A DNA stretch of 64,000 nt, taken from the sequence record MZ475892.1; one strand, 5' to 3'. The notes under the pieces are model-generated. The model did not search any database. It worked only from the letters and a program-made list of their open reading frames with translations, and was not told where the DNA came from. Position numbers and translations under genes: made by a program. Positions 13,791 through 62,445 of the stretch are shown one piece after another (position 1 is the first letter of the stretch; the number at the start of each line of letters is the position of its first letter).

Positions 13791-13806
13791 TGTTCTTATC
13801 GGGTAT

Positions 13807-22100: not shown

Positions 22101-22283
22101 GCTGCTAAAGATTTTACCATTACGCAGGTCATCAGTTGGCATGTGATCGAGGACAAGTAGTGCTTTACCGCCTTTGGCGCTTTTACTAACGCCTTTTAAA
22201 ATACGAACCCCGTCATAAGTCTGCACGTCGGCAAACTGTTCAGGTGGATCGAAGTCAAGAGCAACGTGCTTGATTTTCACCAT
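19119..22283 (-). CDS. polA: Family A DNA polymerase with a 3'-5' exonuclease domain and an N-terminal UDG-like domain
   Basis: ExoI AVDTET, ExoII NAKFD, ExoIII YAGLD; TGRTSASDPNLQQVP, motif A DYSAHE, motif B AVKTVIFGLIY, NSPVQGFGSD, motif C VHDS. Confidence 0.95.
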   Translation of the reverse strand: MVKIKHVALDFDPPEQFADVQTYDGVRILKGVSKSAKGGKALLVLDHMPTDDLRNGKIFSSTEGELFLNQIQYLEDVFPTKTTLDDWNFLVVSYNMFKTYDKSEQYKEDADQAFADRIRDLIVDYKPDYVLTFGKAPFKALNNERIQYSKEHYEHWYGVEIPTKLKHDGKKHSFIHLPNVSYHTVLNPAVINASSYTLGYMARWMLPWLNKGMRYAIKPVTCGKNRNWKLVYVTKVKQLEKILKKMKRAKLVAVDTETENLNRIKNKIQTVQLSCDGETAYVIPIYHRDSPFSGKELRRISDMFRDYFEDNDNKVQIYTNAKFDLNVMRSNFGIRSYCADVWDIQAGEFGNDENAKSLLTVTGQGYYNLANLAMQYGTTVYHEVSFGKEMRATIADSDLDEAVQEYAGLDVIVPFRIYLSQIKRGVDSKYTKYESLVGEQISDQIHAFSVLETTGAGADIDYLFKLNLPNSPINEEIRNVEREFMSSPEVKAANAVICRDDNVPKMGLMGKVEVTKFDMSKQEHKQILFIDVMRLKPLKEGEQLRDNGKKSAKLDKDFQEAYKELPLVSLYTKLGKAYKLKNAYVNSLLKLWGESEDFKHDRSIRPTYSYLKVVTGRTSASDPNLQQVPSRSEMGKLIKRILIARKNRLLIKVDYSAHEVRGWSIISGDQGVADVFEQGRELRHRYRTVPDPWIKHRVEAEGDVHKINAAYFFGIPNVMDVTKSVRNAVKTVIFGLIYQQGNKGLAKSTGREVGEIEEIKGKFLKRFPVGLKWFDKIQSFAHQNFFVESPVGRRRYLWGFMLPESHKDANMVHAACNRRAVNSPVQGFGSDLMMSAIRILDRMKFEYWKANGVYPDFDMNVSVHDSLTVDCHYDWIFLALDMIERAMTSAVVELVQKRHPGFEFTSVPEIDFEIGASEKDVEGWDFSYEQLRKHIRAGLEQKRDELGEADLDVDKKLDSIMEDQYHLMSTWMQKQLWANGIKIRSMGKVNPLTKKDQKNIDLWKKELPKNIKQWEAYEAEEKAKKAAAAAGDAKKKIKISRSLLKNAVKRITKK

Positions 22284-22322: not shown

Positions 22323-22332
22323 TATTTACAGA
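22323..22332 (-). promoter_or_regulatory. Putative replication-class promoter motif TCTGTAAATA
   Basis: 40 bp upstream of the polA ATG, directly after a terminator. Confidence 0.6.
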
Positions 22333-22344
22333 TTTAGAAACGAG

Positions 22345-24487: not shown

Positions 24488-27400
24488 TTACACTGACTTG
24501 TCTTTCGACGCAGTGAGTTTCAGTTTGGTCAACGCAGCCAGACACTGTTTCATGTTCGGGATGCTGTAGCCAGCTTTCTGAATACGGTTGATACGCGCTT
24601 TCGCACCAGCAACGTTCTTCACGAAACTAATCCACATACCAGACGAAAGGCTGAACGTACCGAACTTACGAGTGTTCGGGATTTTCGTTCCCACGAAGCG
24701 TTTCACTTTCGGGTTAGTCGCAAGGTCGAACATGATACGCAGACGATCTTCCATCACCATCGGATATGCTTTGATGTGCTTAACATCTTTCGCAGAGGTG
24801 TGACGAATCTGGAAGAACTGTTTCAACTGCGACTGTGCCTTAACAGCCAGCTGGTAGTTGAAGCTCAGCTTAGGCGTAGACTCATCGAAGAAGTCCTGAA
24901 CGAACTCCAGACGGCGAGAGGACGGACCGTCAAAGTCCAGCTTCTTAGCCTCGATGAAGTCCAAGAACTTCTCAAAGTCAGAGTAGTACGCGCAATCGAT
25001 ATACACGTAATCCCCGAACTCGGTGAACTCGAAGTCCTTGAGCGCTTTCGCATCTGGGTCGGTCGCATCTGCGTACAGAGCAACGAAGCCGTTGTACACG
25101 GTAGGCGTCAGTTCCAGAGACATATCGGTACCGTCGTCCAGTGTAACAGCAGCACCACGAACAGCCTTGCGCACTTTGTTGTCCAGCGGAGGAAGCTCAG
25201 CGGCCTTACGACGACGAACACGGGCAGCTGCCTGCTCTACGCCTTCGTTGATTGGCTTACCTTCTTCTTTGTTCGCTTTACGTTGAGTAACGCGGGCGTT
25301 CTTACGCTCTTGAGCCTCAACTTTCTTCTCGGTTGCTTTCGAGTCGGCAGTTTGAGTCTCATCGGTCACGGTGTCTTCGACTTCAACGCGCTTGGCTTCT
25401 GCTTCAACACGCTTACGGTCTTTAGCTGTCGCCCACGGCTTACGCACTTCAAAGAAGCGTTTCAGATCAGCAGGAGATACCTTACCAGCGTAATGCACTT
25501 TGTTCGCAGGCACAGTAACGATTTCCTCGCCACCAGCAAGACGAACACGCACGGTACTGATAGGGCTGTCAGCACGCAGCTTACCGTCAGCAGTACGAAC
25601 CGTAACGCTCACGATGATACCGTTACCGAACTCAGTCACAACAGGTGCACGGTTCAGCGCGTCTTTCACGTTCTCACCTGAGGAGAAGTTCTGGTTGCGT
25701 GCCCAATCAAGCAGACGCTCCAGTCCCCAGTTATGACGGTCTGGGATCTTCTGGTTAGCAACGATAGGTACCTGCTCCATGATACGGAAGTCACGCAGAG
25801 CCGGAGTAGCAGGCAGCGGCTGCATTGCTGCAATCGTTGTCTTACGCATCTCTTGGAACTCTTGCGCTTCAATATCGTTCAGGTCACGCTTGGCCAGGAA
25901 GTACGGTTTAAAGTCTTCCATCGTGTTGTTATCAATCAACAGACTTGCATTCATCTTGATTGGAGCAAGCTGATACTGGTCGAGTTTTTCGTAGCGCTGG
26001 TTACCTTTCTCGTCGAAACGAGTTTTCTCCAACGTCTTCCACATCAGACGTGCAACCTTACCTACTTCAAGAGTCTTGTTCGTCATCACCCAATCGATGA
26101 ACACGGCTTCGCGTTTCATATCGCCGGGCTTACCGTTCTCATCAAGCACGGCAGCAGCAACGTCAGGACGGAAGATACGCGCAGTAGACTGATCGTATGT
26201 ACCTGGAGACCACGGGGTGTCGCAGCGAATGATACGACTACCCATCTGCATGTTGTGGCCTTCACTGATTGCCTGTTCGTTAGCAATCAGAATCTGCACA
26301 CGGTCATCGGTCTTGAACGCGTCAAGGTTGGCCTCTTTGTTCTGGCCTAACTTACCGACTTCACCGTGATACACAACAGCGACCTTCTTATAGTTCTCAG
26401 GCAGAGAGTTATAGATTGCGTTTGCAGCACGCGTGTAGCGAGTGAACACAATCAGCTTGCCCTGAACCTCTGGCTTCCAGTAGTCCGGGTCTTCCGGAGG
26501 TGGAACCATTGAAGGAGGCAGTGTTTGACGCTGGAACTCTTCGGACTGTTTACGCGCCAGATACTTCTGACCCTGATAGACAGCCATGTCCAGTTCACGA
26601 GGAGTAACGCCCTGCGTCCAGTTAAAGATTTGCTGCTCTTTGACCAGCGGGTCACGTTCAGGCTGCACTTCAAAGTGCTTGCGAATACGCTCGATGATAG
26701 TCAGGACTTTCGCAGAAACGAACTTAGTGACACCAGCGTTTTCAAACGTCAGACGAGCAACGTCATCGCCCATCGGGTCGGTCAGCATCATCTCCATGCG
26801 CTGGAAGTACATGTTGAGGTCAGCGTTACCTGCGAGCAATGCGCCCAGGTCATCACCTTCTTCAATATCATCTTCATCAATGTCGTCAGAGGCAGTAGCT
26901 TCTGCACCGTCCTCTTCGTCATCTTCACCAGCAGATGCAGCACGGCGTTTGGCGTTGTTAGCAGCTTCCTGCAACTTCTCCAACACCTGAGCATACATCG
27001 CGTTATACACCTCTTGGTGCAGCGATGAGTTAGGCACAGTCGGGTCATCAATCTCAACCTGAATGAAGGTATCGATTGGGTTCGGCAACATGAACGCCCA
27101 GTTCTTACGCTTGAACGAGATGAACGCCGTGTGGTTAGACATACGCGAGTGAGCACGACGAATCATTTCAATGTCGTCTTTCGCGCCGTCGTATGCAACG
27201 TCGAGAGAGTCACCGAACATCGCAGGCGTCATCAATGCAGCCTGACCAACAATGTCACGCACGCGGTCAGTTACCAGAGTACCAGTAGCGATACGCGCAT
27301 AGCGAACAGATGGTGCGGTGAATACTGCTTTGGTGTTGAAGTGCACCTGAGAGCCAGACTGGCCGCCAGAGAAGTTCTTAACCTTGTGCGACTCATCCAG

Positions 27401-30322
27401 CATAACGTAGCTGAAATTGAAGCGGTTAACGAACTCAACAGCACCACGTACGCGAACACGCACACCACCAATGTCAACGTTGAACGTACCGGTCTGCAAG
27501 AAGCTCAGGCCAACGATGAAGAGGGTGTTCTGAGGAGCCTGCTTAATCACGTCGTACATACGGTCTTCACCCCAGGAGTTCACGGTGTCAGACGTAATAG
27601 GTACGGCGTTCCAACCATCAGCAATCTTGTGCAAGTCATCACACCAGTTCGATACGAGGTTGGTAGGGCAGATGATCAGAGGACGAATGTTCTCTTCACC
27701 TAGATCACTCAGCTCCTGAATGGTAGCAGCAATATCGGACAGACCGATGATTGTCTTACCACCGCCAGGCGCGATAAAGACTGTAGCGTAACGCGGACGA
27801 CGGCGAAGTGTTTTGTGCGCTTCTACCTGATGAGGTAAGAGTGCTGCACCAGCTTTGAGTCCAGGAATACGAATGTCTTCAATCGTGATACCCTGATCAG
27901 GCTTGAGGCGTTCAATCTCAGTTTCCGCAGATTCGAAGATCTCCAGAGACTTAGGAATGACAGCGCTATACATCTTGGAGAACGGCAGAATGATTTGCTG
28001 CAAACGTTCTGCGCCTGGCGCTTCGTCGCTTTCAACCAGAGAGCTAAACAGCTTCTTACGATCAGCATTGCCGATAGCAGCAGCCAGCTCACGATACAGC
28101 GCACCACCGAAGTAGTTGTTCAGTCTCGCCATGTCGCTGATTTTGGCAGTCTGACCCATCACAAAGTAATGCGTGTGATTAGGCAGAGACTCCATAGCAC
28201 CAGCAATGTCGCCGCTCATCTCAGTAACGGTAGTCGCTACCATGTTAGAGCCGCGCAGGCCAGATGCATCGTTGAGCACGCGCAGCATGATACGCATAGC
28301 AATCAGACCAGAATCACCCTGAGCCAGAGTAAAGTCATTCTCAATCAGACCCGCGTACAGGTTGTTGTCGAGAGAGCTTTCGGTCAGTGACGCGTTCTCT
28401 GCATCCATACCGATTGCAGCACGCGCTTGCTTGATCAGCGTAGGCAAATCAGGCACCAGCTTGTGGTTGAATGCGAAAGAATACGCAGCCACAGTCTGTG
28501 CGATGATGCTAACAAGGCCATCAACTTCCGAGTCTTCGGTAGTCGTGAACACGATGGTCTTGTCGTTGACGCTATCGATCAGTTTGCCTTTCGCAGCTTC
28601 CAGTTTAGCCGCCTGCAACAGCAGGTCATTAGCAACACGATACGAGGTCATGTTACCGCTAGACTGATTGCTCATGATGTTGCGGATAACGTTCGACGCT
28701 GAGCGGAAGTTAGGCGTTTCGCCAGGCTCTGCAAAGTCGTAACCCAGCATATCAGCAACGTCTAACGAGTTAGGCGCTTTCATACCGACAGTACGGGTTT
28801 CGTTAACCGACAGACCACCACCGTTCGAGGTGTTAACCACCAGCGCGAAGTCTGGGTCGACGCCGATACACACGTTGCTGAATCGCGTTAACGATTTGGC
28901 TTCCGCCTGCATCGAGTTATCGAAGTCGAGGTTGCCGTTCTGAATAGCGAAGATGTTGGTACGCAGCGTCTGGTGTTCAGTAGACAGCGGTACGCCTTTC
29001 GCAAACAGATGCTCCAGCACGCGGTTCAGTTCGGTTTCGTAGTTGCGCACCATCTCAACGTCAATGTCTTCACGGCGGGGCAACACAGACAGCGTACCGT
29101 TAGGCATGATGGTCAGATCGTTTTCATCTGCCACAACATCATGCACAGCGTAGCCGAACTTCTCACGCAGTTGTTTGAGCGCAGGCAGGCCAGTAGCAGA
29201 GGTAACGTAACGTGGGATACGCGCAGCACGCGTGATACCAGTACGAGTAGAACCACTGATACGGAAGTAATAGCTCGTCCAGCCCTGGAACCAACGATAC
29301 AGACACATGGTCTGAGTGTCAGCACCCTGAGAGATGTACTCAACCATCTCTTTGCTAAGGTTAACAATCAGGCCGCCTTCTGCACGAATGTCGGTAGCAA
29401 TTGCTACTTCGTTGAACTCCAGCGGATAGTCGTGGCTGATCTTCATCGCTTCGAGTTTGCGATCAATCATCTGCTTGCCTGGGATAGAGCGCAGGCCCAG
29501 AGTCATGAAGTCGCCGAGCGCATCAACAACGTCTTTGTCCAGATTACGGAACAGGTTGATATCCAGATTGTGCATCTTCGGGTGCACACCACGAAGCGCC
29601 GCATTGTAGATAGACCAGTCTTTGCCGAGAGGGATACGAACAACTTTGGTCTGGAACACGTTGGCGTTGGTACGCGCTTCACCGAAGATATCCTTGTACA
29701 GGGTCTTCGCGGCGTTGATAGCTGCCTGAGCAATGTCAGAGCTATACACCTGAATGTTCATCTGCTCAAAGTTAGAGTCGTTATCGACACGAGGACGATC
29801 ACTACCCTGACTGTTCGTAACGTTGAAGTTACCCGCACCAGCAGCTGGAGACTGCGGGCATGGCGTGCCTGACATGATAATGTCTTTGCCGCCTGGGTAC
29901 ACGGTACTGTTTTCGATGATAGCGCCTGAGGTGTTGCTCAAGTTTTCCGCTAACGCCGTTTTGATTTCACGCGACAGCTTACCGCTGTTCAGCAGCACCT
30001 GAATCTTGTTCGTGGACATGTCCACATATTGCTGCACACGCTTGGTGAACTCTTCTGGCGCTACTTCCAGAATGTCTTCGAACTCAGCACCATTACGGAT
30101 GATGTAGTTGAGCAAGTCGAATGCTGCATAGATACGGGCGACAGTTGACGCAGAGAACACGGCCAGTGTTTCATAGTGACGGCGTGCTTTGCCTGTCACG
30201 TACATCTTGGCCATGAGCTGCTCGGAGCCGAACGGTACAGGTTTTACCGCCAGCGCCTGATTAAAGCTATCAGCAATTTGCTGGGTCGCTGTGGCGGAGG
30301 TACTGATAATCTGATTCATCAT
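24488..30322 (-). CDS. Giant SNF2-family (SF2) helicase/translocase
   Basis: 1944 aa; LLPHQ, APGGGKT, LIICP, LDESHKVKN, ATGT, SEGHNMQ, WSPGTYDQSTARIFR; about 800 aa unassigned N-terminus. Confidence 0.9.
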   Translation of the reverse strand: MMNQIISTSATATQQIADSFNQALAVKPVPFGSEQLMAKMYVTGKARRHYETLAVFSASTVARIYAAFDLLNYIIRNGAEFEDILEVAPEEFTKRVQQYVDMSTNKIQVLLNSGKLSREIKTALAENLSNTSGAIIENSTVYPGGKDIIMSGTPCPQSPAAGAGNFNVTNSQGSDRPRVDNDSNFEQMNIQVYSSDIAQAAINAAKTLYKDIFGEARTNANVFQTKVVRIPLGKDWSIYNAALRGVHPKMHNLDINLFRNLDKDVVDALGDFMTLGLRSIPGKQMIDRKLEAMKISHDYPLEFNEVAIATDIRAEGGLIVNLSKEMVEYISQGADTQTMCLYRWFQGWTSYYFRISGSTRTGITRAARIPRYVTSATGLPALKQLREKFGYAVHDVVADENDLTIMPNGTLSVLPRREDIDVEMVRNYETELNRVLEHLFAKGVPLSTEHQTLRTNIFAIQNGNLDFDNSMQAEAKSLTRFSNVCIGVDPDFALVVNTSNGGGLSVNETRTVGMKAPNSLDVADMLGYDFAEPGETPNFRSASNVIRNIMSNQSSGNMTSYRVANDLLLQAAKLEAAKGKLIDSVNDKTIVFTTTEDSEVDGLVSIIAQTVAAYSFAFNHKLVPDLPTLIKQARAAIGMDAENASLTESSLDNNLYAGLIENDFTLAQGDSGLIAMRIMLRVLNDASGLRGSNMVATTVTEMSGDIAGAMESLPNHTHYFVMGQTAKISDMARLNNYFGGALYRELAAAIGNADRKKLFSSLVESDEAPGAERLQQIILPFSKMYSAVIPKSLEIFESAETEIERLKPDQGITIEDIRIPGLKAGAALLPHQVEAHKTLRRRPRYATVFIAPGGGKTIIGLSDIAATIQELSDLGEENIRPLIICPTNLVSNWCDDLHKIADGWNAVPITSDTVNSWGEDRMYDVIKQAPQNTLFIVGLSFLQTGTFNVDIGGVRVRVRGAVEFVNRFNFSYVMLDESHKVKNFSGGQSGSQVHFNTKAVFTAPSVRYARIATGTLVTDRVRDIVGQAALMTPAMFGDSLDVAYDGAKDDIEMIRRAHSRMSNHTAFISFKRKNWAFMLPNPIDTFIQVEIDDPTVPNSSLHQEVYNAMYAQVLEKLQEAANNAKRRAASAGEDDEEDGAEATASDDIDEDDIEEGDDLGALLAGNADLNMYFQRMEMMLTDPMGDDVARLTFENAGVTKFVSAKVLTIIERIRKHFEVQPERDPLVKEQQIFNWTQGVTPRELDMAVYQGQKYLARKQSEEFQRQTLPPSMVPPPEDPDYWKPEVQGKLIVFTRYTRAANAIYNSLPENYKKVAVVYHGEVGKLGQNKEANLDAFKTDDRVQILIANEQAISEGHNMQMGSRIIRCDTPWSPGTYDQSTARIFRPDVAAAVLDENGKPGDMKREAVFIDWVMTNKTLEVGKVARLMWKTLEKTRFDEKGNQRYEKLDQYQLAPIKMNASLLIDNNTMEDFKPYFLAKRDLNDIEAQEFQEMRKTTIAAMQPLPATPALRDFRIMEQVPIVANQKIPDRHNWGLERLLDWARNQNFSSGENVKDALNRAPVVTEFGNGIIVSVTVRTADGKLRADSPISTVRVRLAGGEEIVTVPANKVHYAGKVSPADLKRFFEVRKPWATAKDRKRVEAEAKRVEVEDTVTDETQTADSKATEKKVEAQERKNARVTQRKANKEEGKPINEGVEQAAARVRRRKAAELPPLDNKVRKAVRGAAVTLDDGTDMSLELTPTVYNGFVALYADATDPDAKALKDFEFTEFGDYVYIDCAYYSDFEKFLDFIEAKKLDFDGPSSRRLEFVQDFFDESTPKLSFNYQLAVKAQSQLKQFFQIRHTSAKDVKHIKAYPMVMEDRLRIMFDLATNPKVKRFVGTKIPNTRKFGTFSLSSGMWISFVKNVAGAKARINRIQKAGYSIPNMKQCLAALTKLKLTASKDKSV

Positions 30323-39355: not shown

Positions 39356-39365
39356 TATTTACAGA
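39356..39365 (-). promoter_or_regulatory. Putative replication-class promoter motif TCTGTAAATA
   Basis: 27 bp upstream of sbcD, directly after a hairpin. Confidence 0.55.
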
Positions 39366-39450
39366 ATAAAGGGAAGCCGAAGCCGCCCAATGTTGGTCAG
39401 ATGATAAAAATTATTGTACAAATAGAAAACGCCCCGTTAGGAGCGTTTGC

Positions 39451-40724: not shown

Positions 40725-40733
40725 GATCACTAT

Positions 40734-41558
40734 TTACAGTTGTATGGTAGCCCTACTGCGTATCGAAAGAGAAGGCTTAGTGCCAGGCGCAACAGGCAAA
40801 TTGATTTGATCGCTTACTACCAGTTCGTCTTTGAGTTTGACGATCACTCGCAGTGCGGGAGAGTACATGATACCTAAGTCCAGTATAGGCTTCTCGTCCG
40901 CAGGCACGAAATTGCCTGTTAGCCAAGAGATGCAGTTAGAGCTTATGAGCGCTGCTCGTCCGCCATAGCCAGGACGTTCGTGTCCGTAAGAGGCTTGGCC
41001 TCGCATGATAAGCAACTCAGGCAGAGCCGGACCAAAGGAATATTTGGGATTGTCGTAGCGGTAGGTTTCGTACGAGGCAGTGTTACCCAGCGTGTATATG
41101 TCTGTGCCTGTATTCGTGTTCATGCGAGCAACGTATGTATAGGAGTAACCTCCTCCGTACGCACCGTAACAACCAAACAGCGGCATAGACATTGCAACTG
41201 TTGCATCACGAGCAACTTCTGGAAAAACAGCAGCGAGGGAATTTGATGCGCTGTGTGCTACACCCATAATAGTATCTGCACCGACGTTATACGAACCTAT
41301 CACAGGATTCGTTATCATGTCACTGAATTTTGTTCGGCGGGTATTGAACATGAAATTGGTCATATAGTATTTGTCGCCAAGTTGGCCTACAACACCATTG
41401 ACGAATGTTTTGCCTGCAATGCCGCGCGCTTTAGGCGTCAGTGCAACTATCTGATCAGGTGACTCTATCTCATCGATGTTGATTGCATCGCGTGAGTCAA
41501 ACATTACCAGCTCACCAAATTGTTCGAATGTAGTATTTGCTTGCGCTAGATATAGCAT
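40734..41558 (-). CDS. Hypothetical protein (possible fibre/receptor-binding-like)
   Basis: 274 aa, G/Y-rich; AAGGA RBS. Confidence 0.55.
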   Translation of the reverse strand: MLYLAQANTTFEQFGELVMFDSRDAINIDEIESPDQIVALTPKARGIAGKTFVNGVVGQLGDKYYMTNFMFNTRRTKFSDMITNPVIGSYNVGADTIMGVAHSASNSLAAVFPEVARDATVAMSMPLFGCYGAYGGGYSYTYVARMNTNTGTDIYTLGNTASYETYRYDNPKYSFGPALPELLIMRGQASYGHERPGYGGRAALISSNCISWLTGNFVPADEKPILDLGIMYSPALRVIVKLKDELVVSDQINLPVAPGTKPSLSIRSRATIQL

Positions 41559-49448: not shown

Positions 49449-49457
49449 TATTTACAG
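49449..49457 (-). promoter_or_regulatory. Putative replication-class promoter motif CTGTAAATA
   Basis: Heads the operon containing sbcC; directly after a terminator. Confidence 0.55.
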
Positions 49458-49481
49458 TATTTGAGGCATACAGACAAAAAG

Positions 49482-52608: not shown

Positions 52609-52618
52609 TATTTACAGA
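52609..52618 (-). promoter_or_regulatory. Putative replication-class promoter motif TCTGTAAATA
   Basis: 37 bp upstream of dnaX, after a terminator. Confidence 0.6.
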
Positions 52619-52632
52619 TTTTAGACAAAAAG

Positions 52633-52962: not shown

Positions 52963-52972
52963 TGTTTACAGA
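52963..52972 (-). promoter_or_regulatory. Putative replication-class promoter motif TCTGTAAACA
   Basis: 40 bp upstream of ATG 52923. Confidence 0.5.
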
Positions 52973-52975
52973 TTG

Positions 52976-56564: not shown

Positions 56565-56576
56565 ATATCACCTCGA

Positions 56577-57080
56577 TTATTTATTTCTGGACTTTTGAAT
56601 ACGTTTCACATATTCATACCATTTCTTATTGCAGTATTGAGTGAACTCCAATGTATCGACACGCCCAGCGTAACGTTTGTGCCAAGAACCTGGTTTGTCT
56701 GTTACGCCAGAACGACCATATAGAGAAAATACCAAATGAGGTAGTCCCCACATGATAGGGAAATTCGTTTTCCGAATCACACGAGACAACTCCTGCGTAA
56801 GGTCGGACCAGTTGAAGTCTTTGAAAATAAGTTCGAGTTGTTTCTCAACCCAAGCCTGCTTCTTTGGATCAAATTGATCAAGAAGCGGGTACTCAGAACC
56901 TTTTTTCCAACCACGCATCCAAGCAACCGGAGGCATACGGCCTTTATATGAATTAGGACTTTGGTACTTGATGCTGTCTATCATCAACGCCTCTTCGAAT
57001 ACAGTTAATATCTGCGCTCGTTTGGTGAAGAATTTAGGCGGCTCTTGCTTTATGGTAAGTTTTCTTTTCACTCTAGGCAT
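56577..57080 (-). CDS. Hypothetical aromatic-rich protein
   Basis: Start moved to ATG 57080 (MPRVKRK); promoter-like motif upstream. Confidence 0.6.
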   Translation of the reverse strand: MPRVKRKLTIKQEPPKFFTKRAQILTVFEEALMIDSIKYQSPNSYKGRMPPVAWMRGWKKGSEYPLLDQFDPKKQAWVEKQLELIFKDFNWSDLTQELSRVIRKTNFPIMWGLPHLVFSLYGRSGVTDKPGSWHKRYAGRVDTLEFTQYCNKKWYEYVKRIQKSRNK

Positions 57081-57102
57081 AATAGAACTCAACAATAGTG
57101 CA

Positions 57103-57112
57103 TGTTTACAGA
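57103..57112 (-). promoter_or_regulatory. Putative replication-class promoter motif TCTGTAAACA
   Basis: Intergenic, 23 bp upstream of ATG 57080. Confidence 0.45.
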
Positions 57113-57113
57113 A

Positions 57114-57638
57114 TCAATCGGCAGTAGACCCGATGCGCTCTAATTCGTAGGTCAAGTAAGCATCCCACGAATAGAATCCATCTTTAGCCAACACAGAATC
57201 AAACTGTCGGCTGATCTTCGTACCTTTAGGAAAGCGAATGCGATCAGACAGACGTTGAAGTCTGGCGTAGGTCATCTCAACTTTCTTCACAATTGGGTGT
57301 GTGCTCGGTAAATGATTCTGCAGGAACTTGCAGCTAAAGATCAGCGGGAATTCTTTGAGGAGCTCCACTGATTCTTTTTGAGCAGCCACCAGCCTGCTAT
57401 AGTCATTCACCTGCTCATGGATTTCAGGATGAGCATAGTACCAATCGTCGAGAGACTCTAACCCAAGACGTTCTTCGTACATCATTGACTCGTACATTAC
57501 CATCAGTACGGGCTTCTCTTCCTTCTTATCCTTGAAAGCAACAAACAGTTTGGGATAAGTTCCAAACTTCTTTTCCATAAAGACTTCGAGGATTATCGCA
57601 TAACGAAGAATCTCAAATTCGGTTAGTACCTTGCTCAT
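57114..57638 (-). CDS. Hypothetical protein
   Basis: 174 aa; AAGGT RBS. Confidence 0.65.
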   Translation of the reverse strand: MSKVLTEFEILRYAIILEVFMEKKFGTYPKLFVAFKDKKEEKPVLMVMYESMMYEERLGLESLDDWYYAHPEIHEQVNDYSRLVAAQKESVELLKEFPLIFSCKFLQNHLPSTHPIVKKVEMTYARLQRLSDRIRFPKGTKISRQFDSVLAKDGFYSWDAYLTYELERIGSTAD

Positions 57639-57641
57639 ACC

Positions 57642-59246
57642 TTACTCCGAAATATCTTTGTCACAAAACTTTTTAGCAATGAACGTGGCATCGGTACTTT
57701 CAATGCTGTCGCCCTCAACACAAAGCAAAGCGCCATCATGCTCAAGAGAATAAACGCCTTTGATATTCGGGCAATTGAGAATCGCATCGAACAGGTACTT
57801 ACTCTCCCAGCCTGCAAGCATGTGGTTTAACACGCGGCGCCTTATCTTCTTATCACTTTCGCCTTCTTCTGGATCGTAGTTAGACCCAGTGGCGCACGTC
57901 AGCACACCATATTCAGGTCGCTTCGCCTTTTTGTTTTTCCGAAACTGCTTTGCGTACTCGTTAAGCAAATCTCGTATTGAGAAATAGAGCAACGATGTTC
58001 TGGTGTTCCAGTCCTCCATAGCAGTGCGAACTTTATACTTCGGCATCGTCTTACGAAGTTCTTTGTAGACGTTGCTGTACGGGTTGATCTCCAGTTGACC
58101 AGCGGAGAAGATGGTGGCGTACAAACAAATCTTTGCCGTCTTCTTATCCATCTGAGATATACGGGCCATGTCTTCCACAGACTTAATATCGTCGAAGAAT
58201 CCGTAGTCAATCGAATACGAGGCCAACTCGTTTCGTAACACGTTGAACTGGCTGGACTTCATGTCCCAGTTAGTACCGACAGTAAAGCAGGCTTGTTTAA
58301 GAATGCTCGGCAAGTTTTGAAAACCACCGCCGATTTCAAACAAGCGACCACCAATCTGAGACAATCGGTATCGAGGCCAGTAGCGAATAGTTAACGGGTT
58401 AGTGTTAGCAATCTGCACAGGTCCAGAAACGATTGTGTCCAAGAGAGCTTTAACCTGCAAATACTGTTTCTTTGCTTTGTTGTTAGCAATCAAGGACTTC
58501 TCTTCAAGGTATTCAAGTATCGGCTCGATGTTAACCTCATTCGGCAGCATCTTGTCCAATACCTTGCGATACAGTAGCCTGCCCGTTAAACCTTTTCCGC
58601 GGTCCCTGTTTCTATCAAGGGACTTGAGATCGTGCTGCGGTCTAATAAAAGGCAGCTTAGAATTTTTCTCAATCATCGACCAAACAGTCACCCCATAGTC
58701 TTCTCGCAGTATGCGTACAGGACTATAGAAACGGACACGCTTTAGAATGTCCTCTGACGTGTGATGATTGATATGTTGGTACATCCCGTCAAGAATCTCC
58801 TGACGTATGCGGAACTCTCTGCTAAGGCCCTTTTTCTTATCGTAAGGCTTCGTCTCAAAGACGTTAACCATTAACCAGTCCAAGGATCTACTGAAAGTAC
58901 CTTCTTTTTTAGCATACTTGCCGACAGCAACGCTATTTCCGCCTCTACGGAAGCCAAATACCATCGGAAGCTCTGTTTGCCCTAAAATCTTAGGAAAAGG
59001 TACCCATACACGGCCAAACTTCTTCTTTTTGTGTTTGCGCGATGGGTACAAGCTGCATTGAAGAATGTGCCAGAAGAAAAGATTCAATTGAGTACGAAAC
59101 TCACGCTCGGAGTCCGCAGGCCCCGTATAAGGACATGCGTTTACCACGTTGCTTTTCACCCAAAGAACGACTTCTTTCTCCTGGTAGGAGGGGTTCTTGA
59201 TCAGAACGGCCCCCTGACCGGAAACGATTCGTTTTTTCATACTCAC
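57642..59246 (-). CDS. Divergent family-A/T7-like polymerase-fold protein (TV-Pol-like), with no exonuclease domain
   Basis: GGRLF..GGGFQNLP, WDMKSSQ, AKICLYATIFS and LEHDG occur in the order of PolA motifs 2, A, B and C. Confidence 0.6.
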   Translation of the reverse strand: MSMKKRIVSGQGAVLIKNPSYQEKEVVLWVKSNVVNACPYTGPADSEREFRTQLNLFFWHILQCSLYPSRKHKKKKFGRVWVPFPKILGQTELPMVFGFRRGGNSVAVGKYAKKEGTFSRSLDWLMVNVFETKPYDKKKGLSREFRIRQEILDGMYQHINHHTSEDILKRVRFYSPVRILREDYGVTVWSMIEKNSKLPFIRPQHDLKSLDRNRDRGKGLTGRLLYRKVLDKMLPNEVNIEPILEYLEEKSLIANNKAKKQYLQVKALLDTIVSGPVQIANTNPLTIRYWPRYRLSQIGGRLFEIGGGFQNLPSILKQACFTVGTNWDMKSSQFNVLRNELASYSIDYGFFDDIKSVEDMARISQMDKKTAKICLYATIFSAGQLEINPYSNVYKELRKTMPKYKVRTAMEDWNTRTSLLYFSIRDLLNEYAKQFRKNKKAKRPEYGVLTCATGSNYDPEEGESDKKIRRRVLNHMLAGWESKYLFDAILNCPNIKGVYSLEHDGALLCVEGDSIESTDATFIAKKFCDKDISE

Positions 59247-59275
59247 ATCGTGATTACCTGAGTTTTTCTATCTGA

Positions 59276-59285
59276 TATTTACAGA
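59276..59285 (-). promoter_or_regulatory. Putative replication-class promoter motif TCTGTAAATA
   Basis: 30 bp upstream of ATG 59246. Confidence 0.55.
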
Positions 59286-59527
59286 TTCAGACTTATCTTA
59301 TTGACCCGTACGATACAGCGCTTGGTACGGCTACAGCTACTACAGCGGAGCTAGCGGGATACGCGCTTGGCTTGCTCGAAACATGGAAGGAGAGGTACAT
59401 CTTTAGGCGGCACGTTTTGTAGAGGCTGAATCCGAGAGATTAGCACTATCAATGCCCCTCCACCCATGCTGGAGCTGCTTAGAATAGCATTCTGTTAGGA
59501 TAATTTAGGTCGTCTAAACCGTGTAAA

Positions 59528-59622
59528 TTTTCCCGAGAAAACAGACGATTTTCCGTAAAACACGCCCGTTTTCAGACAAAAACCAGAAAAATCTTAATAA
59601 AATCAAGGACTTTTCCGAAAAC
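59528..59622. repeat. Four phased TTTTC-n-AAAAC quasi-palindromes (candidate origin iterons / bent DNA)
   Basis: Copies start at 59528, 59549, 59569 and 59611 (spacings 21, 20, 42 bp). Confidence 0.6.
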
Positions 59623-59633
59623 TACTCAGGAAA

Positions 59634-60293
59634 TCACTTCTTGCGAGAGATCTGTTGGTTCAATTTCTTACCAATTTGAGACAAAACGCGCTCAACGGTC
59701 TCTCCGTCACGCTCCCCGATAGCCATAGCGAGCCTTTCGCCCTGTTCACGCGATAGCTCAGGCATAATCAGCTTGAGCATCTTTGATCGCGCCTTTGCAG
59801 ACTTTGATTTGCCTTTTGACAGCGATTGCGTTTCCATTTCGGCAGCAACACGGCTCATTGTGCGCTGCACGCGACGATCTGCGAATATATCACCGAAGAT
59901 ATTGCCAAACAGGTCCTGGAACGAGCGTCCGCCACCAAAGATCTCATCCTTAGTGAAGCGCACTTCCTTTCCTAGCGCATTACGCTTAACGCTGTGGGTG
60001 CTTTCCACTTCGTTTTGGACGCGTGCACCTTCGATGAAGTTCTCATCAGGCCGCGATTTCTTACCTTCAGCACCGGGCTTAGTAACGCCGTTACGCAGCT
60101 CAGCACGCCCTTCAACGGCCGCATCAGGGTCAAACATGTCATCAGTGTTGACGCTCTGATTAGGGTCAAAGGGAATCTTGTCTGTCAGCTTGTTTTCATC
60201 TGGCCACGAACGAGGGATATCCGACGCCGGTTGTGGGCTATTCGTCATATCACCGTTCTTCTCGCTGTTCAGACTCACATAAATCTTGGTCAT
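59634..60293 (-). CDS. Low-complexity putative internal head protein with leader MTKIYVSL
   Basis: 219 aa; AGGAG RBS. Confidence 0.55.
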   Translation of the reverse strand: MTKIYVSLNSEKNGDMTNSPQPASDIPRSWPDENKLTDKIPFDPNQSVNTDDMFDPDAAVEGRAELRNGVTKPGAEGKKSRPDENFIEGARVQNEVESTHSVKRNALGKEVRFTKDEIFGGGRSFQDLFGNIFGDIFADRRVQRTMSRVAAEMETQSLSKGKSKSAKARSKMLKLIMPELSREQGERLAMAIGERDGETVERVLSQIGKKLNQQISRKK

Positions 60294-60302
60294 TTGTTTC
60301 TC

Positions 60303-61409
60303 CTAGAGAATTTTAAAGCCCTTGAAAATGTTATACGCGTATTCTTTGCGTTGTACGGCACGGGTGGTGCACACCCATTCCCATTGATCGTTCTTTGCTG
60401 TGCGCTTCTTCGGCGCTTCCATCACTTTCAGCACATAGTTTTTGAAAGGCAGAACCAGCAAATCTTCAGGCTCAAGCGGGCCACAACGCGCAGGCAGAAC
60501 AACACTCAGGTTACCTACAGTCAGTTCCTGATCGTAATCCAGCACGTTTGCTTCTTCGCTGATATTGCCTTTAACGTAAGGCACGCCCAGATCGAATATC
60601 ATTGTGGCATGTGTGAAAGCCTCAACGCCACCGATTCTGATCGTTACGTTCTTGCCACGAAACTTATCCAGCGTTTCCGCTTTTAACTCAACCGCTACGC
60701 CGTTCAGCATCAGCATAGGACGTGGGAAAGCAGGAAGCACTTTCTCATTCAATCTGACCGAATAAGTCGCCTGCGTAAAGTATTTTGGAATAAGCTGATC
60801 GAACTCAACGAAGCCGTCTTTGCGTACCTGACGGAACGTTGAAGGGCTGGTGGACTGATCGTATGTGTAGCCTTCAATACGTAGCGCATGGTGCTGCATC
60901 ATAACGTTGTACACGAAACCTGTGCTAATGAATCCAGGCACGATGCCTTGACGGAAGCACACAGCACAGTTGGCGTTGTTACCGCCATCCCATTTGACGC
61001 TCATCTCTTCTTCGGTGTCGCCCATGAGATCTGCTGCGCTCAACGTTGCGTTCTCACCTTCGTCGAGGTCATCAAGGCTAACCGTTTGACGTCCACCACC
61101 AAACATGCCTTTCGACACAGTGTTCAGCTTGACGTTACCCTGAGTGCCGAGGCTTGAACGGCCAACGCTTTTCATTCCACCCAAGTTGGAATCAAAGTCG
61201 TCGTTGACTGTTTTGTTGCAACTGCACGTCAGACCGAATTTTGCTTTCTTGAATATGATAATGTCCGTAGCATCGACGGCTAATGCCTGTTCTACCTTGG
61301 ACTTGACCACTTCCTGAATGGAGTCGAGGCGCTGCTGCACTCGCTTTGTCTCGTAGGTCTTGTGGCGATCATATTTATTACGGGGTTTGCCACGTTCAAT
61401 CCAGCTCAT
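60303..61409 (-). CDS. Putative head-closure/neck protein with a Zn-binding motif
   Basis: TCSC...NCAVCFRQG resembles the CxC..CxxC motif of large-myovirus neck proteins; late motif upstream. Confidence 0.45.
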   Translation of the reverse strand: MSWIERGKPRNKYDRHKTYETKRVQQRLDSIQEVVKSKVEQALAVDATDIIIFKKAKFGLTCSCNKTVNDDFDSNLGGMKSVGRSSLGTQGNVKLNTVSKGMFGGGRQTVSLDDLDEGENATLSAADLMGDTEEEMSVKWDGGNNANCAVCFRQGIVPGFISTGFVYNVMMQHHALRIEGYTYDQSTSPSTFRQVRKDGFVEFDQLIPKYFTQATYSVRLNEKVLPAFPRPMLMLNGVAVELKAETLDKFRGKNVTIRIGGVEAFTHATMIFDLGVPYVKGNISEEANVLDYDQELTVGNLSVVLPARCGPLEPEDLLVLPFKNYVLKVMEAPKKRTAKNDQWEWVCTTRAVQRKEYAYNIFKGFKIL

Positions 61410-61430
61410 ATTAATCTCCTTTGTTGCTCT

Positions 61431-61438
61431 GAAATTAT
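61431..61438 (-). promoter_or_regulatory. Putative late-class promoter motif ATAATTTC
   Basis: 22 bp upstream of ATG 61409 in the divergent intergenic region. Confidence 0.5.
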
Positions 61439-61507
61439 TGTGCTGTTTCCGTGCCTTTCACATCAAAAATATTTATTTAGTAGCACAATGAAAATACGGA
61501 GTTTCAT

Positions 61508-62056
61508 ATGCGCGTTCTTTCAGGCGACCCGGGTAAGGTTAACTTCGCGCTGTCTGTCCAGGAGTTCAAGGACAAACGCATTACTGTTATAGGCACTCGC
61601 ATGTTCCGCAGTCCTATTCAGAACCTGCATTACGATATGCGTCAGCCCACAAAAGAGTTTCTTGCCGAGCTTGAGCTAATATGGAAACTCTACGGACCGT
61701 TCGATGCCATGTGCTTTGAGCGCTTCCAGTCGCGTGGTCTTGGCGGCAACACCATTGAAGCTATCAGCCTCATGCTCGGTGTCATATCGTTCTTTGCGTT
61801 GAAGAAGAAATGCCCCCTTGATTTAATCACTGCTAGTCAGTGGAAAAATGCTTTCAACCGTAGCATGGACCTTAAAGGCTATTATGCGGAATATAATCTG
61901 ACGTCAAAGAAAAGCCAAAAAGCAATTCATGAATTTGATGCGAGCCTCATTGGCGTCTATACCTTCTATCGTCATTCAGAAATCAAACCGTTTGCAGGCT
62001 TCAATCGTATCATCGATGCGTATGTTCCACGATTCCTGGAAGCACCTGTTCTTTGA
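61508..62056 (+). CDS. ruvC: RuvC-like Holliday junction resolvase
   Basis: VLSGDPG, CFERFQ, ASQWK and HEFDA acidic catalytic pattern; GGAG RBS. Confidence 0.8.
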   Translation: MRVLSGDPGKVNFALSVQEFKDKRITVIGTRMFRSPIQNLHYDMRQPTKEFLAELELIWKLYGPFDAMCFERFQSRGLGGNTIEAISLMLGVISFFALKKKCPLDLITASQWKNAFNRSMDLKGYYAEYNLTSKKSQKAIHEFDASLIGVYTFYRHSEIKPFAGFNRIIDAYVPRFLEAPVL

Positions 62057-62401: not shown

Positions 62402-62403
62402 AT

Positions 62404-62412
62404 TCTGTAAAT
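62404..62412 (+). promoter_or_regulatory. Putative replication-class promoter motif TCTGTAAAT
   Basis: The motif flips to the plus strand together with the genes; 34 bp upstream of ATG 62446. Confidence 0.5.
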
Positions 62413-62445
62413 GATCTTACTTGGTTAACCTGTAGGATATTTGCG

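What the first reader, a model, noticed from the sequence alone, without database searches (positions are those of the whole stretch)
57642..59246. A second, minimal PolA-fold enzyme with no exonuclease domain (TV-Pol-like primase or initiator?)
Seen in sequence: this 534-aa ORF carries four segments in the same order as those of the window's own PolA. They are GGRLFEIGGGFQNLP vs TGRTSASDPNLQQVP, WDMKSSQF vs VDYSAHEV (motif A Asp), KTAKICLYATIFS vs NAVKTVIFGLIY (motif B) and LEHDG vs SVHDS (motif C Asp). It has no Exo motifs; instead there is a ~250-aa basic N-terminal region. Established knowledge: the TV-Pol family (related to family A DNA polymerases and T7-type RNA polymerases) was predicted to synthesise primers in mobile elements. 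Inference: this is a dedicated primer synthetase or origin-binding initiator. It is preceded by the replication-class promoter motif and lies directly beside a candidate origin.
Basis: partly seen in the sequence, partly recalled or inferred. Interest (0 to 1): 0.75.

Follow-up and report, generated by a model that had tools for sequence, protein, structure and literature searches.

The report
TV-Pol-type second polymerase in jumbo phage
This unannotated 534-residue gene of an Erwinia jumbo phage encodes a stripped-down, proofreading-free relative of DNA polymerase I (the TV-Pol family), kept next to the phage's replication genes, so these easily grown phages could be used to test whether such enzymes start DNA synthesis.

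Summary
The ORF (window 57642-59246, minus strand; phage pEa_SNUABM_34, annotated hypothetical) carries the four quoted segments in PolA order. Pairwise BLAST against the window's PolA shows nothing. Three other lines support the relationship: the motif residues are almost invariant across 150 relatives; hhalign aligns them to Klenow R668, D705, K758 and H881/D882; and the 43 best Foldseek PDB matches of an AlphaFold model (pLDDT 83) are all family A DNA polymerases. There is no exonuclease domain. The basic N-terminal 200 residues match no known fold.

A profile search reaches resolvase- and integrase-linked proteins and Microcystis phage Ma-LMM01 gp030, so this is a TV-Pol family member. The 'dedicated primase/initiator' reading is only partly supported. 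The phage has its own DnaG-type primase 6.5 kb away. No helicase or conserved OB-fold partner is adjacent. The proposed origin at 59500-59630 has no independent support.

In favour: the gene shares an exact 12-nt promoter-like motif with the PolA and clamp-loader genes. It lies 2.2 kb from the genome's main switch in gene orientation. In a 98%-identical sister phage it is swapped as one cassette with its upstream intergenic region and downstream genes.

Verdict: new member of a known kind; function (most likely primase-polymerase) untested.

The parts
57642..59246 (-). TV-Pol-family gene, 534 aa (pEaSNUABM34_00219, QYW03521.1); stop codon at 57642-57644
   Evidence: ORF list, translation and GenBank annotation; phrog_30690 of unknown function; no Pfam or NCBIfam match
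58647..59246 (-). Basic N-terminal domain, residues 1-200 (pI 10.0); conserved in the clade (C38, P39, F57-H60, W124, L125), fold unassigned
   Evidence: Alignment A1; pI; separate model with pLDDT 79; Foldseek PDB best E=1, with only weak winged-helix-like hints; weak HMM match to the N-terminus of Ma-LMM01 gp030
58392..58646 (-). Residues 201-285: helical segment preceding the palm (helices 221-231, 241-251, 256-273), the presumed short thumb
   Evidence: Secondary structure of the model.
58308..58352 (-). Beta-hairpin motif GGRLFEIGGGFQNLP (residues 299-313); R301 corresponds to Klenow R668
   Evidence: R301 in 149/150 and Q310 in 147/150 sequences; strands 293-295 and 302-304 in the model
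58242..58271 (-). Motif A, NWDMKSSQFN (residues 326-335); D328 corresponds to Klenow D705; Q333 falls at the steric-gate position E710
   Evidence: hhalign; D328 in 149/150, N326 in 147/150, Q333 in 135/150 plus His in 11; strand 325-329 followed by helix 332-343
58104..58145 (-). Motif B / O-helix, KKTAKICLYATIFS (residues 368-381); K372=K758, Y376=F762, F380=Y766
   Evidence: hhalign; K372 in 149/149 and Y376 in 108/150; position 380 is F in 67 and M in 61; helix 368-381
57801..57827 (-). NHMLAGWES (residues 474-482), counterpart of the PolA 'QGxAAD' helix
   Evidence: hhalign; G479 in 147/148 and E481 in 148/148; family consensus QGxE
57726..57749 (-). Motif C, SLEHDGAL (residues 500-507); H503 and D504 correspond to Klenow H881 and D882, at the turn of hairpin 495-501/505-510
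   Evidence: D504 and G505 in 147/147, H503 in 138/147
59276..59287 (-). Promoter-like motif AATCTGTAAATA, 30-40 nt upstream of the start codon
   Evidence: Exact copies upstream of the PolA and clamp-loader genes; 14 sites versus 4.4 expected; TCTGTAAA(T/G)A is kept upstream of the orthologue in pEa_14, JA11 and pEa_5 although the rest of the spacer does not align
59247..59633 (.).
   Evidence: Only short repeats, no AT dip; no Rfam family; a long spacer is kept at this position in JA11 (445 nt) and pEa_5 (492 nt); replaced together with the gene in pEa_14
57114..57638 (-). 174-aa gene starting 3 nt after the TV-Pol stop codon; possible cassette-specific partner
   Evidence: No Pfam, PHROG or PDB match; found directly downstream in 20 phage records of the Y3/AD1 type only; lies inside the swapped cassette
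56577..57095 (-). Second small downstream gene (172-aa ORF; annotated as 135 aa, 56577-56984), last gene of the swapped cassette
   Evidence: no family match

Best explanation
The gene encodes a member of the TV-Pol family. It is a minimal family-A-type (Pol I / T7-like) nucleotidyltransferase made of a short thumb, an Arg-bearing beta-hairpin, a palm and an O-helix fingers subdomain, with no proofreading or 5' nuclease domain. This core is fused to a strongly basic ~200-residue N-terminal domain of unassigned fold.

It should be catalytically active by the two-metal mechanism. D328 (motif A) and D504 (motif C) would hold the metals, K372/Y376 on the O-helix would hold the incoming nucleotide, and R301 would contact the primer/template. 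The residues at the sugar-selecting positions suggest that dNTPs are the substrate: Gln at the Klenow E710 position, and Phe/Met rather than the Tyr of T7 RNA polymerase at the Y766/Y639 position.

It is transcribed from the same promoter type as the phage's PolA replicase and clamp loader. It sits in the replication/recombination cluster near the point from which the two gene arms diverge.

Most likely role (inferred, not shown): a DNA primase-polymerase that starts or restarts DNA synthesis for the phage, for example at the origin region or at recombination intermediates. It would work alongside the DnaG-type primase that serves the lagging strand, not in its place. The basic N-terminal domain, and possibly the cassette-specific downstream proteins, would supply template binding. 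In the CcPol-MP primase, the only tested relative, that job is done by the separate MP subunit.

Confidence by step: PolA-fold active polymerase about 0.85; TV-Pol membership about 0.8; DNA rather than RNA product about 0.6; de novo priming/initiator role about 0.35-0.4.
For: Fold: AlphaFold2 model with pLDDT 83. The top 43 Foldseek PDB hits are all family A DNA polymerases (Pol1 6vdd 4e-6, Klenow 1e-5, Taq, Pol theta, Pol nu, T7 DNAP). BFVD hits include TV-Pol-type fusion proteins of Pyramimonas orientalis virus (6e-7) and Qinghai Lake virophage.

Motifs: hhalign pairs R301/D328/K372/H503-D504 with Klenow R668/D705/K758/H881-D882. These residues are over 98% conserved in 150 sequences.

Family: a profile search gives 378 representatives at E<=1e-3, with no Pfam or NCBIfam coverage. 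P0058 lies directly after a Resolvase gene. P0146 lies beside an integrase and ParA. Ma-LMM01 gp030, next to IS transposases, is hit at 1.8e-43 by the family HMM and at 5.5e-6 by the clade-only HMM. These match the contexts described in PMC2579912.

Selection: 96.8% nucleotide identity versus 98.9% protein identity with pEa_13. The gene is syntenic in 43+ phage genomes of several genera and intact in JA11.

Co-regulation: an exact 12-mer is shared with the PolA and clamp-loader upstream regions.

Location: 2.2 kb from the main divergence of gene orientation (window 61409/61508). DnaG primase, Holliday-junction resolvase, RecA, SSB, SbcCD and the clamp loader are all nearby, and the cumulative GC-skew minimum is at record 190,979.

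Module behaviour: the intergenic region, the gene and the downstream genes are replaced as one 3.06-kb block between 98%-identical phages.

Precedent for priming by an A-family polymerase: CcPol-MP (PMC7581432, PMC10061031).
Against: No activity has been measured for any protein of this clade.

The phage already has a DnaG-type primase, so a second primase is not obviously needed.

No D5-like or other helicase is fused or adjacent, and that context was the basis of the original TV-Pol primase prediction.

No conserved OB-fold partner was found. The 174-aa downstream gene is limited to one subclade, and other lineages carry an unrelated ~340-360-aa protein there.

The sequence evidence for the PolA link is weak on its own: hhalign probability 17% (P=0.0015), no Pfam or PDB hit by HMMER. 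Foldseek TM-scores are only 0.3-0.4.

The Arg of the RxxxK motif is not conserved (K368 here; Val is commonest).

The N-terminal domain has no significant structural match, so DNA binding rests on charge alone.
Confidence: 0.45

Rival explanations
1. It is an accessory, primer-dependent DNA polymerase used for repair, gap filling, translesion synthesis or recombination-dependent synthesis, like Pol theta, Pol nu or Pol I. It would have no de novo priming activity.
For: It is exonuclease-less and apparently has a short thumb, like the low-fidelity A-family enzymes. Pol theta and Pol nu are among the top structural hits. The gene sits among recombination genes (SbcCD, Holliday-junction resolvase, RecA, PD-(D/E)XK nuclease). 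The phage already has DnaG. CcPol without MP only extends primers (PMC7581432).
Against: Sequence-wise the family clusters with mobile-element TV-Pols rather than with repair PolAs. The cassette-wise co-replacement with its upstream spacer is not expected for a generic repair enzyme. The conserved basic N-terminal domain has no counterpart in repair PolAs.
Confidence: 0.3
2. It is the polymerase of a selfish TV-Pol cassette that has settled at one hot spot of these genomes. It would serve the cassette's own spread or maintenance rather than phage replication.
For: TV-Pols are typical of transposons and integrated elements, including one inside phage Ma-LMM01 (PMC2579912). The 3.06-kb block is exchanged cleanly between 98%-identical phages. 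Alleles are extremely divergent (23% identity).
Against: No recombinase, transposase or terminal repeats of a mobile element lie in or next to the cassette. It always occupies the same syntenic slot in 43+ genomes. It shows strong purifying selection. The promoter motif is shared with PolA and the clamp loader and is retained in every allele.
Confidence: 0.1
3. It is a minimal single-subunit RNA polymerase of the T7 type. It would make RNA, either transcripts or an RNA primer at the origin, as T7 RNA polymerase does at the T7 primary origin.
For: TV-Pols are related to both PolA and T7-like RNA polymerases (PMC2579912). T7 RNAP appears among the structural hits (rank 44, E 3.8e-3). The gene lies next to a long non-coding spacer.
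Against: DNA polymerases outrank T7 RNAP by three orders of magnitude in E-value, and the RNAP match has an rmsd of 19.6 A. The position of T7 RNAP Y639 is Phe/Met, and the position of its Gly542 is Gln (the roles of these residues are from prior knowledge). There is no promoter-recognition N-terminal domain or specificity loop in 534 aa. The phage lineage encodes a sigma factor, so it uses the host RNA polymerase.
Confidence: 0.08
4. It is a catalytically dead polymerase fold kept for a structural or DNA-binding role only.
For: Some MGE 'Pol' partners are reduced to an inactive RRM (PMC10061031). The third carboxylate of PolA (Klenow E883) is Gly here.
Against: Both metal-binding Asp residues, the O-helix Lys and the hairpin Arg are over 98% conserved across 150 very divergent sequences.
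Confidence: 0.03

Closest known systems
TV-Pol family (Iyer, Abhiman & Aravind 2008, PMC2579912)
   Same: Both have a minimal thumb / Arg-hairpin / palm / HTH-fingers core with two catalytic Asp and the O-helix Lys, and no nuclease domain. Both are 400-600 aa with an extra N-terminal domain. A sequence-profile link joins this clade to resolvase-, integrase- and transposase-associated members and to the Ma-LMM01 protein.
   Different: Here the gene is a vertically kept, syntenic gene of a jumbo-phage clade that also has a full PolA replicase and a DnaG primase. No D5-like helicase, resolvase, integrase or transposase is linked to it. The Arg of RxxxK is not conserved. No TV-Pol of this type has been tested biochemically.
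CcPol-MP primase of SCCmec / PolA-SSB primases (PMC7581432, PMC10061031)
   Same: Both are exonuclease-deficient A-family polymerase cores encoded by a mobile genome. CcPol-MP was experimentally shown to make DNA primers de novo with dNTPs using the polymerase active site, and it was listed among the TV-Pols in 2008.
   Different: CcPol is recognisably a PolA, close to the CHEAP subfamily (PMC10201439), and keeps three exonuclease helices. It needs the small OB-fold protein MP and is followed by the Cch2 helicase. The phage protein is not detected by Pfam DNA_pol_A. It has its own basic N-terminal domain. It has no adjacent helicase and no conserved small partner.
Family A DNA polymerases (E. 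coli Pol I Klenow, Taq, T7 gp5, Pol theta/nu) and the window's own PolA (19119-22283)
   Same: They share the palm/fingers fold and the order and identity of the key residues (R668, D705, K758, F762/Y766, H881-D882).
   Different: There is no significant pairwise or HMMER similarity. There is no 3'-5' exonuclease. The N-terminal domain is different. The 'PNLQNIP' segment reads GGGFQNLP, and motif C reads EHDG instead of VHDE.
T7-type single-subunit RNA polymerase
   Same: Same superfamily fold. The T7 enzyme is also encoded next to the origin that it primes (prior knowledge; T7 map).
   Different: The structural match is much weaker. The protein is 534 aa versus 883 aa. The residues that select rNTPs in T7 RNAP are absent.

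Membership tests
TV-Pol | Minimal polymerase core (thumb, hairpin, RRM palm, fingers) with no fused nuclease domain | tested here: met
   The model and Foldseek matches cover palm and fingers. There is no exonuclease Pfam hit. The N-terminal 200 aa match no nuclease fold.
TV-Pol | Beta-hairpin carrying an absolutely conserved arginine | tested here: met
   R301 lies between strands 293-295 and 302-304, is present in 149/150 sequences, and aligns with Klenow R668.
TV-Pol | Two conserved metal-binding aspartates in the palm | tested here: met
   D328 is present in 149/150 and D504 in 147/147 sequences. They align with D705 and D882. Their distance in the model was not measurable because no coordinates were available.
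TV-Pol | [quoted passage not shown] | tested here: inconclusive
   K372 is invariant (149/149). Position -4 is K368 here but varies in the family (V 50, K 39, R 21 of 150).
TV-Pol | Sequence-profile relationship to acknowledged TV-Pols | tested here: met
   The family HMM hits Ma-LMM01 gp030 at 1.8e-43 and the clade-only HMM at 5.5e-6. BLASTP of gp030 against hits of the clade profile gives 1e-12. P0058, at E 5e-18 to the clade profile, follows a resolvase gene. Caveat: that gp030 is the Ma-LMM01 TV-Pol of the 2008 paper is inferred from its size and its transposase neighbours. The paper names only the phage.
TV-Pol | Linked to a D5-like helicase (fusion or neighbour), or to a resolvase, integrase or transposase | tested here: not met
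   None lies within about 10 kb in pEa_34, JA11, pEa_5 or pEa_14. The feature is met only in distant family members.
CcPol-MP / PolA-SSB primase | Small OB-fold ssDNA-binding partner encoded directly downstream | tested here: inconclusive
   A 174-aa gene follows after 3 nt, but it is confined to the Y3/AD1-type subclade. It is unrelated to the ~340-360-aa protein that follows the gene in pEa_14, pEa_5 and JA11.
CcPol-MP / PolA-SSB primase | Helicase (Cch2-type) in the same operon | tested here: not met
   None of the neighbouring products has a helicase domain.
CcPol-MP / PolA-SSB primase | De novo, template-dependent DNA primer synthesis | not testable with these tools
   This needs a biochemical assay.
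Family A DNA polymerase (Pfam PF00476) | Match to the curated DNA_pol_A model | tested here: not met
   No Pfam hit even at E<=10. None of 41 diverse relatives has one either. The window's true PolA scores 8.6e-53.
Family A DNA polymerase (Pfam PF00476) | Palm/fingers fold with motifs A, B and C in order | tested here: met
   Foldseek probability is 1.00 to 43 PolA structures. hhalign gives a collinear alignment of 197 columns.
T7-like single-subunit RNA polymerase | Closer structural match to RNAP than to DNAP, with rNTP-selecting Tyr (Y639) and Gly (G542) equivalents | tested here: not met
   T7 RNAP ranks 44th, at E 3.8e-3 and rmsd 19.6 A. The equivalent positions are Phe/Met and Gln.

The most novel reading that the evidence does not exclude
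The TV-Pol, its 387-nt upstream spacer and the downstream small proteins would form an origin-and-initiator specificity cassette. In this reading the enzyme binds its own upstream region through the basic N-terminal domain. It lays down the first DNA primer for the PolA replicase, while DnaG serves only the lagging strand. Sister phages would then exchange whole cassettes the way lambdoid phages exchange ori/initiator modules. That would make a family-A-fold enzyme a third kind of replicative primase in a tailed phage that can be grown in the laboratory.
Probability: 0.2. Interest if true: 0.75.

Novelty: new member of a known kind. Interest (0 to 1): 0.55.

Why it matters
TV-Pols were predicted in 2008 to be primase-polymerases of transposons, virophages and polinton-like viruses. 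Apart from the atypical CcPol-MP pair, none has been tested.

This work adds three things. It identifies a previously unannotated TV-Pol that is conserved in 43+ cultured jumbo phages of Erwinia, Dickeya and Yersinia. It shows this TV-Pol coexisting with a complete PolA/DnaG replication set. It shows the gene behaving as an exchangeable module together with its upstream non-coding region.

This gives a system that is tractable genetically and biochemically for asking what a second, proofreading-free A-family polymerase does in a large phage, and whether TV-Pols can prime. It also corrects database annotation, which currently reads 'hypothetical protein', 'putative helicase' or a truncated ORF. 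Finally, it adds about 380 sequence clusters to a family that has no Pfam, NCBIfam or named PHROG model.

Tried and rejected
Searches that found nothing:
- Pfam, NCBIfam and PHROG annotation of the target and 41 relatives.
- phmmer and hmmsearch of the protein and of the clade profile against PDB sequences, which gave only chance hits.
- BLASTP against the window's PolA.
- Rfam on the spacer: nothing above noise.

Technical limits:
- The search for related loci with the broad alignments A2 and A3 failed for lack of a conserved 7-10-column stretch. With A1 it returned a single bacterial MAG locus, L005, which was not examined further.

Ideas tested and not upheld:
- A CcPol-MP-like conserved small partner. 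The 174-aa gene is not conserved outside one subclade and has no detectable family.
- A vestigial exonuclease or known DNA-binding fold in the N-terminal domain. Foldseek gave E>=1; the winged-helix hints are not significant.
- The origin at 59500-59630. Only 9-16-nt imperfect repeats are present, GC content is 0.445, and there is no local skew inflection.
- Pseudogenisation in JA11/JA13, suggested by short BFVD entries. The JA11 reading frame is intact over 549 codons; the annotated start is simply too far downstream.

The RNA-polymerase reading and the dead-enzyme reading were considered and ranked low (see the rival explanations).
Full report
**What the sequence is.** The window is positions 124001-188000 of Erwinia phage pEa_SNUABM_34 (MZ475892.1, 264 kb, a jumbo myophage of the Lu11/PaBG/Y3 'hairy' group) (PMC7412058). 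The ORF at 57642-59246 lies on the minus strand and has 534 codons. It starts at GTG 59246, or at ATG 59240 as in most homologues. It is annotated 'hypothetical protein'. It belongs to phrog_30690 (function unknown) and matches no Pfam or NCBIfam model.

**Check of the observation.** They occur in the target and in the window's real PolA (19119-22283, minus strand, 1054 aa, Pfam DNA_pol_A 8.6e-53 plus the 3'-5' exonuclease domain). Pairwise BLASTP between the two proteins is not significant. HMMER searches of the protein, or of a 21-sequence clade profile, against PDB sequences return only chance matches. On their own, then, the four short segments could be coincidence. Three independent tests say they are not.

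- Conservation. In the 21 close homologues the invariant columns coincide with the proposed motifs (GGRLFE.GGGFQ..P; N.DM..SQ.N; K...Y.T; H...G.E; S.EHDGAL). In an alignment of 150 family members, R301 is kept in 149/150, D328 in 149/150, K372 in 149/149, E481 in 148/148, and D504 and G505 in 147/147.
- Profile comparison. hhalign of that family against a PolA alignment (E. coli Klenow, T7 gp5, the window's PolA and 30 relatives) aligns target 290-509 with Klenow 656-887 over 197 columns. It pairs R301-R668, D328-D705, K372-K758, Y376-F762, F380-Y766, 'NHMLAGWES' with 'NAPMQGTAAD', and H503/D504-H881/D882. The statistics are modest (P=0.0015, probability 17%).
- Structure. An AlphaFold2 model built on the 21-sequence alignment has mean pLDDT 83. 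It shows the expected elements: hairpin 293-295/302-304, strand 325-329 followed by helix 332-343, O-helix 368-381, long helix 465-491, and hairpin 495-501/505-510 with H503-D504 at the turn. The first 43 Foldseek matches in the PDB are all family A DNA polymerases: Pol1 of M. smegmatis at 4e-6, Klenow at 1e-5, Taq, Pol theta, Pol nu and T7 DNA polymerase, all at probability 1.00. T7 RNA polymerase appears only at rank 44. TM-scores are 0.3-0.4, as expected when only about 300 of 534 residues are shared.

The model's coordinates are not exposed, so I could not measure the Asp-Asp distance.

**No exonuclease; a basic N-terminal domain.** No exonuclease model matches. Residues 1-200 were modelled separately (pLDDT 79). 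They have no significant structural neighbour (best E=1). A scatter of winged-helix proteins among the weak hits is not evidence. The region is strongly basic (pI 10.0 for residues 1-200) and stays basic in all 21 homologues (pI 9.4-10.2). It carries its own invariant residues (C38, P39, F57-H60, W124, L125).

**Which family.** A profile search of 1.84 billion representative proteins with the clade alignment found 378 proteins at E<=1e-3 and 133 at E<=1e-10. Most are 450-600 aa and match the palm/fingers half (profile positions 245-495). None of 41 sampled members has a Pfam or NCBIfam domain. Their genomic contexts are those described for the TV-Pol family (PMC2579912):

- P0058 (E 5e-18) lies directly after a serine resolvase gene in two contigs.
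- P0146 lies between an integrase and ParA.
- P0024 lies in a phage contig.

Microcystis phage Ma-LMM01 is named in the 2008 paper as carrying a TV-Pol element. Its gp030 (506 aa) sits beside two IS transposase genes. The family HMM hits it at 1.8e-43 and the clade-only HMM at 5.5e-6. It shares G.R.YE.GGG.Q, NYD and HDGAL. The BFVD structural hits just after the phage orthologues include TV-Pol-type fusion proteins of Pyramimonas orientalis virus and a virophage.

I therefore file the protein as a TV-Pol family member, with two reservations. The Arg of the RxxxK motif is not conserved. The defining helicase or recombinase linkage is absent in these phages.

**Context in the phage.** The gene is conserved at the same syntenic position in 43 phage records detectable with this protein. 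More divergent orthologues occur in a further set (Yoloswag, pEa_5, _7, _14, _16, _18, _21, _28, _35, _36, pEp_52). It is under purifying selection: 96.8% DNA identity versus 98.9% protein identity with pEa_13. It is intact in JA11, where the annotated start is too far downstream.

Around it lie replication and recombination genes: clamp loader, SbcC and SbcD, a Holliday-junction resolvase, and, in the annotated relative JA11, RecA, SSB and a sigma factor. A canonical DnaG-type primase (CHC2 zinc ribbon plus Toprim, 365 aa) lies 6.5 kb upstream, just outside the window. It is also present in JA11 and pEa_5. This weakens the idea that the TV-Pol is the phage's dedicated primer synthetase. No helicase is adjacent.

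**Promoter and 'origin'.** The 12-mer AATCTGTAAATA occurs exactly at three places: 30-40 nt upstream of this gene, upstream of the clamp loader, and upstream of PolA. At up to 2 mismatches there are 14 sites against 4.4 expected, most of them just upstream of minus-strand genes. TCTGTAAA(T/G)A is retained upstream of the orthologue in pEa_14, JA11 and pEa_5, although the rest of the spacer does not align.

The proposed origin (59500-59630) shows only short imperfect repeats. It has no AT-rich dip, no skew inflection and no Rfam match.

At the genome scale the neighbourhood does look origin-like. Minus-strand genes run from 46.0 to 185.4 kb. Apart from the DnaG primase and a small ORF overlapping it (189.66-190.87 kb, minus strand), plus-strand genes run from 185.5 kb round to 45.9 kb. 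The divergence point is window 61409/61508, 2.2 kb from the gene's start. The cumulative GC skew has its minimum at record 190,979 and its maximum at 63,437. Skew and gene orientation are confounded, so this places an origin only roughly.

**A cassette.** pEa_SNUABM_14 is 98% identical to pEa_34 on both sides of this locus. The block at window 56576-59637 holds the whole spacer, the TV-Pol gene and the two small downstream genes. In pEa_14 it is replaced by 3.05 kb with no detectable DNA similarity. The replacement carries a 576-aa TV-Pol allele (23% identity over 204 aa) and an overlapping 338-aa gene. That 338-aa protein also follows the TV-Pol in pEa_5 (33%, 2e-50) and JA11 (28%, 1e-24). 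It shows no similarity to the 174- and 172-aa proteins of pEa_34. The 174-aa gene is restricted to the Y3/AD1-type phages.

The spacer, the enzyme and the downstream gene(s) are therefore inherited as a unit. That fits a cis-site / enzyme / partner module. It also fits ordinary mosaic exchange or a selfish cassette.

**How it most likely works.** Three things are shown: a PolA-type palm/fingers fold, with every residue needed for two-metal nucleotidyl transfer conserved; co-regulation signals shared with the replicase genes; and modular inheritance with the upstream spacer.

Two things are inferred from prior knowledge of Klenow, T7 DNA polymerase and T7 RNA polymerase. Gln333 sits at the steric-gate position (E710 in Klenow, Gly542 in T7 RNAP). 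Phe/Met sits at the Y766/Y639 position. Both point to dNTP rather than rNTP use.

By analogy with CcPol-MP, the only A-family enzyme shown to prime (PMC7581432, PMC10061031), and from the original TV-Pol argument, I infer a primase-polymerase role. The enzyme would start or restart DNA chains for the PolA replicase, with the basic N-terminal domain (and perhaps the downstream proteins) holding the template. I give this role about 0.35-0.4. The main rival is a primer-dependent accessory or repair polymerase, at about 0.3.

**Novelty.** No paper in the searched library links TV-Pol to these phages. Databases call the protein hypothetical, or in pEa_5 'putative helicase'. The kind (TV-Pol) is known, so this is a new member of a known kind found in a new setting. 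Interest is moderate, because it offers cultivable phages in which the 2008 primase prediction can be tested.

Noticed in passing
window 56576-59637 versus L021:6601-9653 (pEa_SNUABM_14): A 3.06-kb block (spacer, TV-Pol gene and two small genes) is replaced by non-homologous DNA in a phage that is 98% identical on both sides. The breakpoints fall exactly at the ends of the flanking genes.
   Followed up: partly
L021:8637-9653, L011:10701-11735, L004:21673-22761: A conserved protein of 338-362 aa and unknown function follows, and in pEa_14 overlaps, the TV-Pol gene in pEa_14, pEa_5 and JA11 (E 2e-50 and 1e-24). It is absent, or unrecognisable, in pEa_34.
   Followed up: partly
L001:4380-5477 (record 189770-190867; would be window 65770-66867, outside the window): A DnaG-type primase (CHC2 zinc ribbon plus Toprim, 365 aa) is annotated as hypothetical. 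It lies next to the global GC-skew minimum at record 190,979.
   Followed up: partly
window 13804-13815, 18897-18908, 22323-22334, 39356-39367, 40731-40742, 49449-49460, 52609-52620, 52963-52974, 57103-57114, 59276-59287 (all minus strand); 62402-62413 (plus strand): The promoter-like motif (A/T)(A/T)TCTGTAAA(T/C)A recurs upstream of many genes, including PolA, SbcD, the clamp loader and the TV-Pol. There are 14 sites against 4.4 expected. Which RNA polymerase or sigma factor reads it is unknown.
   Followed up: partly
window 61409-61508; record 45.93-45.99 kb (L018:45930-45995): The genome has two gene arms. They diverge at window 61409/61508 and converge at about 45.96 kb, where a GC-rich hairpin flanked by A and T runs looks like a bidirectional terminator.
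   Followed up: partly
window 59250-59263 and 59624-59637: A 14-nt inverted repeat (93% complementary) brackets the whole 387-nt spacer. Its outer arm coincides with the cassette breakpoint.
   Followed up: no
window 60303-61409 and 59634-60293 (minus strand): Two conserved upstream genes of unknown function. The 368-aa protein has CxC and CxxC pairs and is 57% identical to JA11 gp202. The 219-aa protein is conserved only in its C-terminal 60 residues.
   Followed up: partly
L004:20418-21635 (JA11 gp200); L011:9025-10692 (pEa_5 gp225): Two annotation problems. The JA11 orthologue is annotated 144 codons too short, although the frame is open from about L004:19989. The pEa_5 orthologue is labelled 'putative helicase' and has no helicase domain.
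   Followed up: yes
window 24488-30322 (minus strand): A 1944-aa protein with SNF2-related and Helicase_C domains only in its middle. The remaining roughly 1500 residues are unassigned.
   Followed up: no
L005 (Desulfobacula MAG contig NZ_JAQYWD010000037.1, 8001-9380): This was the only bacterial-genome locus recovered with the clade patterns (23% identity, E 1e-10). Its neighbourhood was not examined.
   Followed up: no
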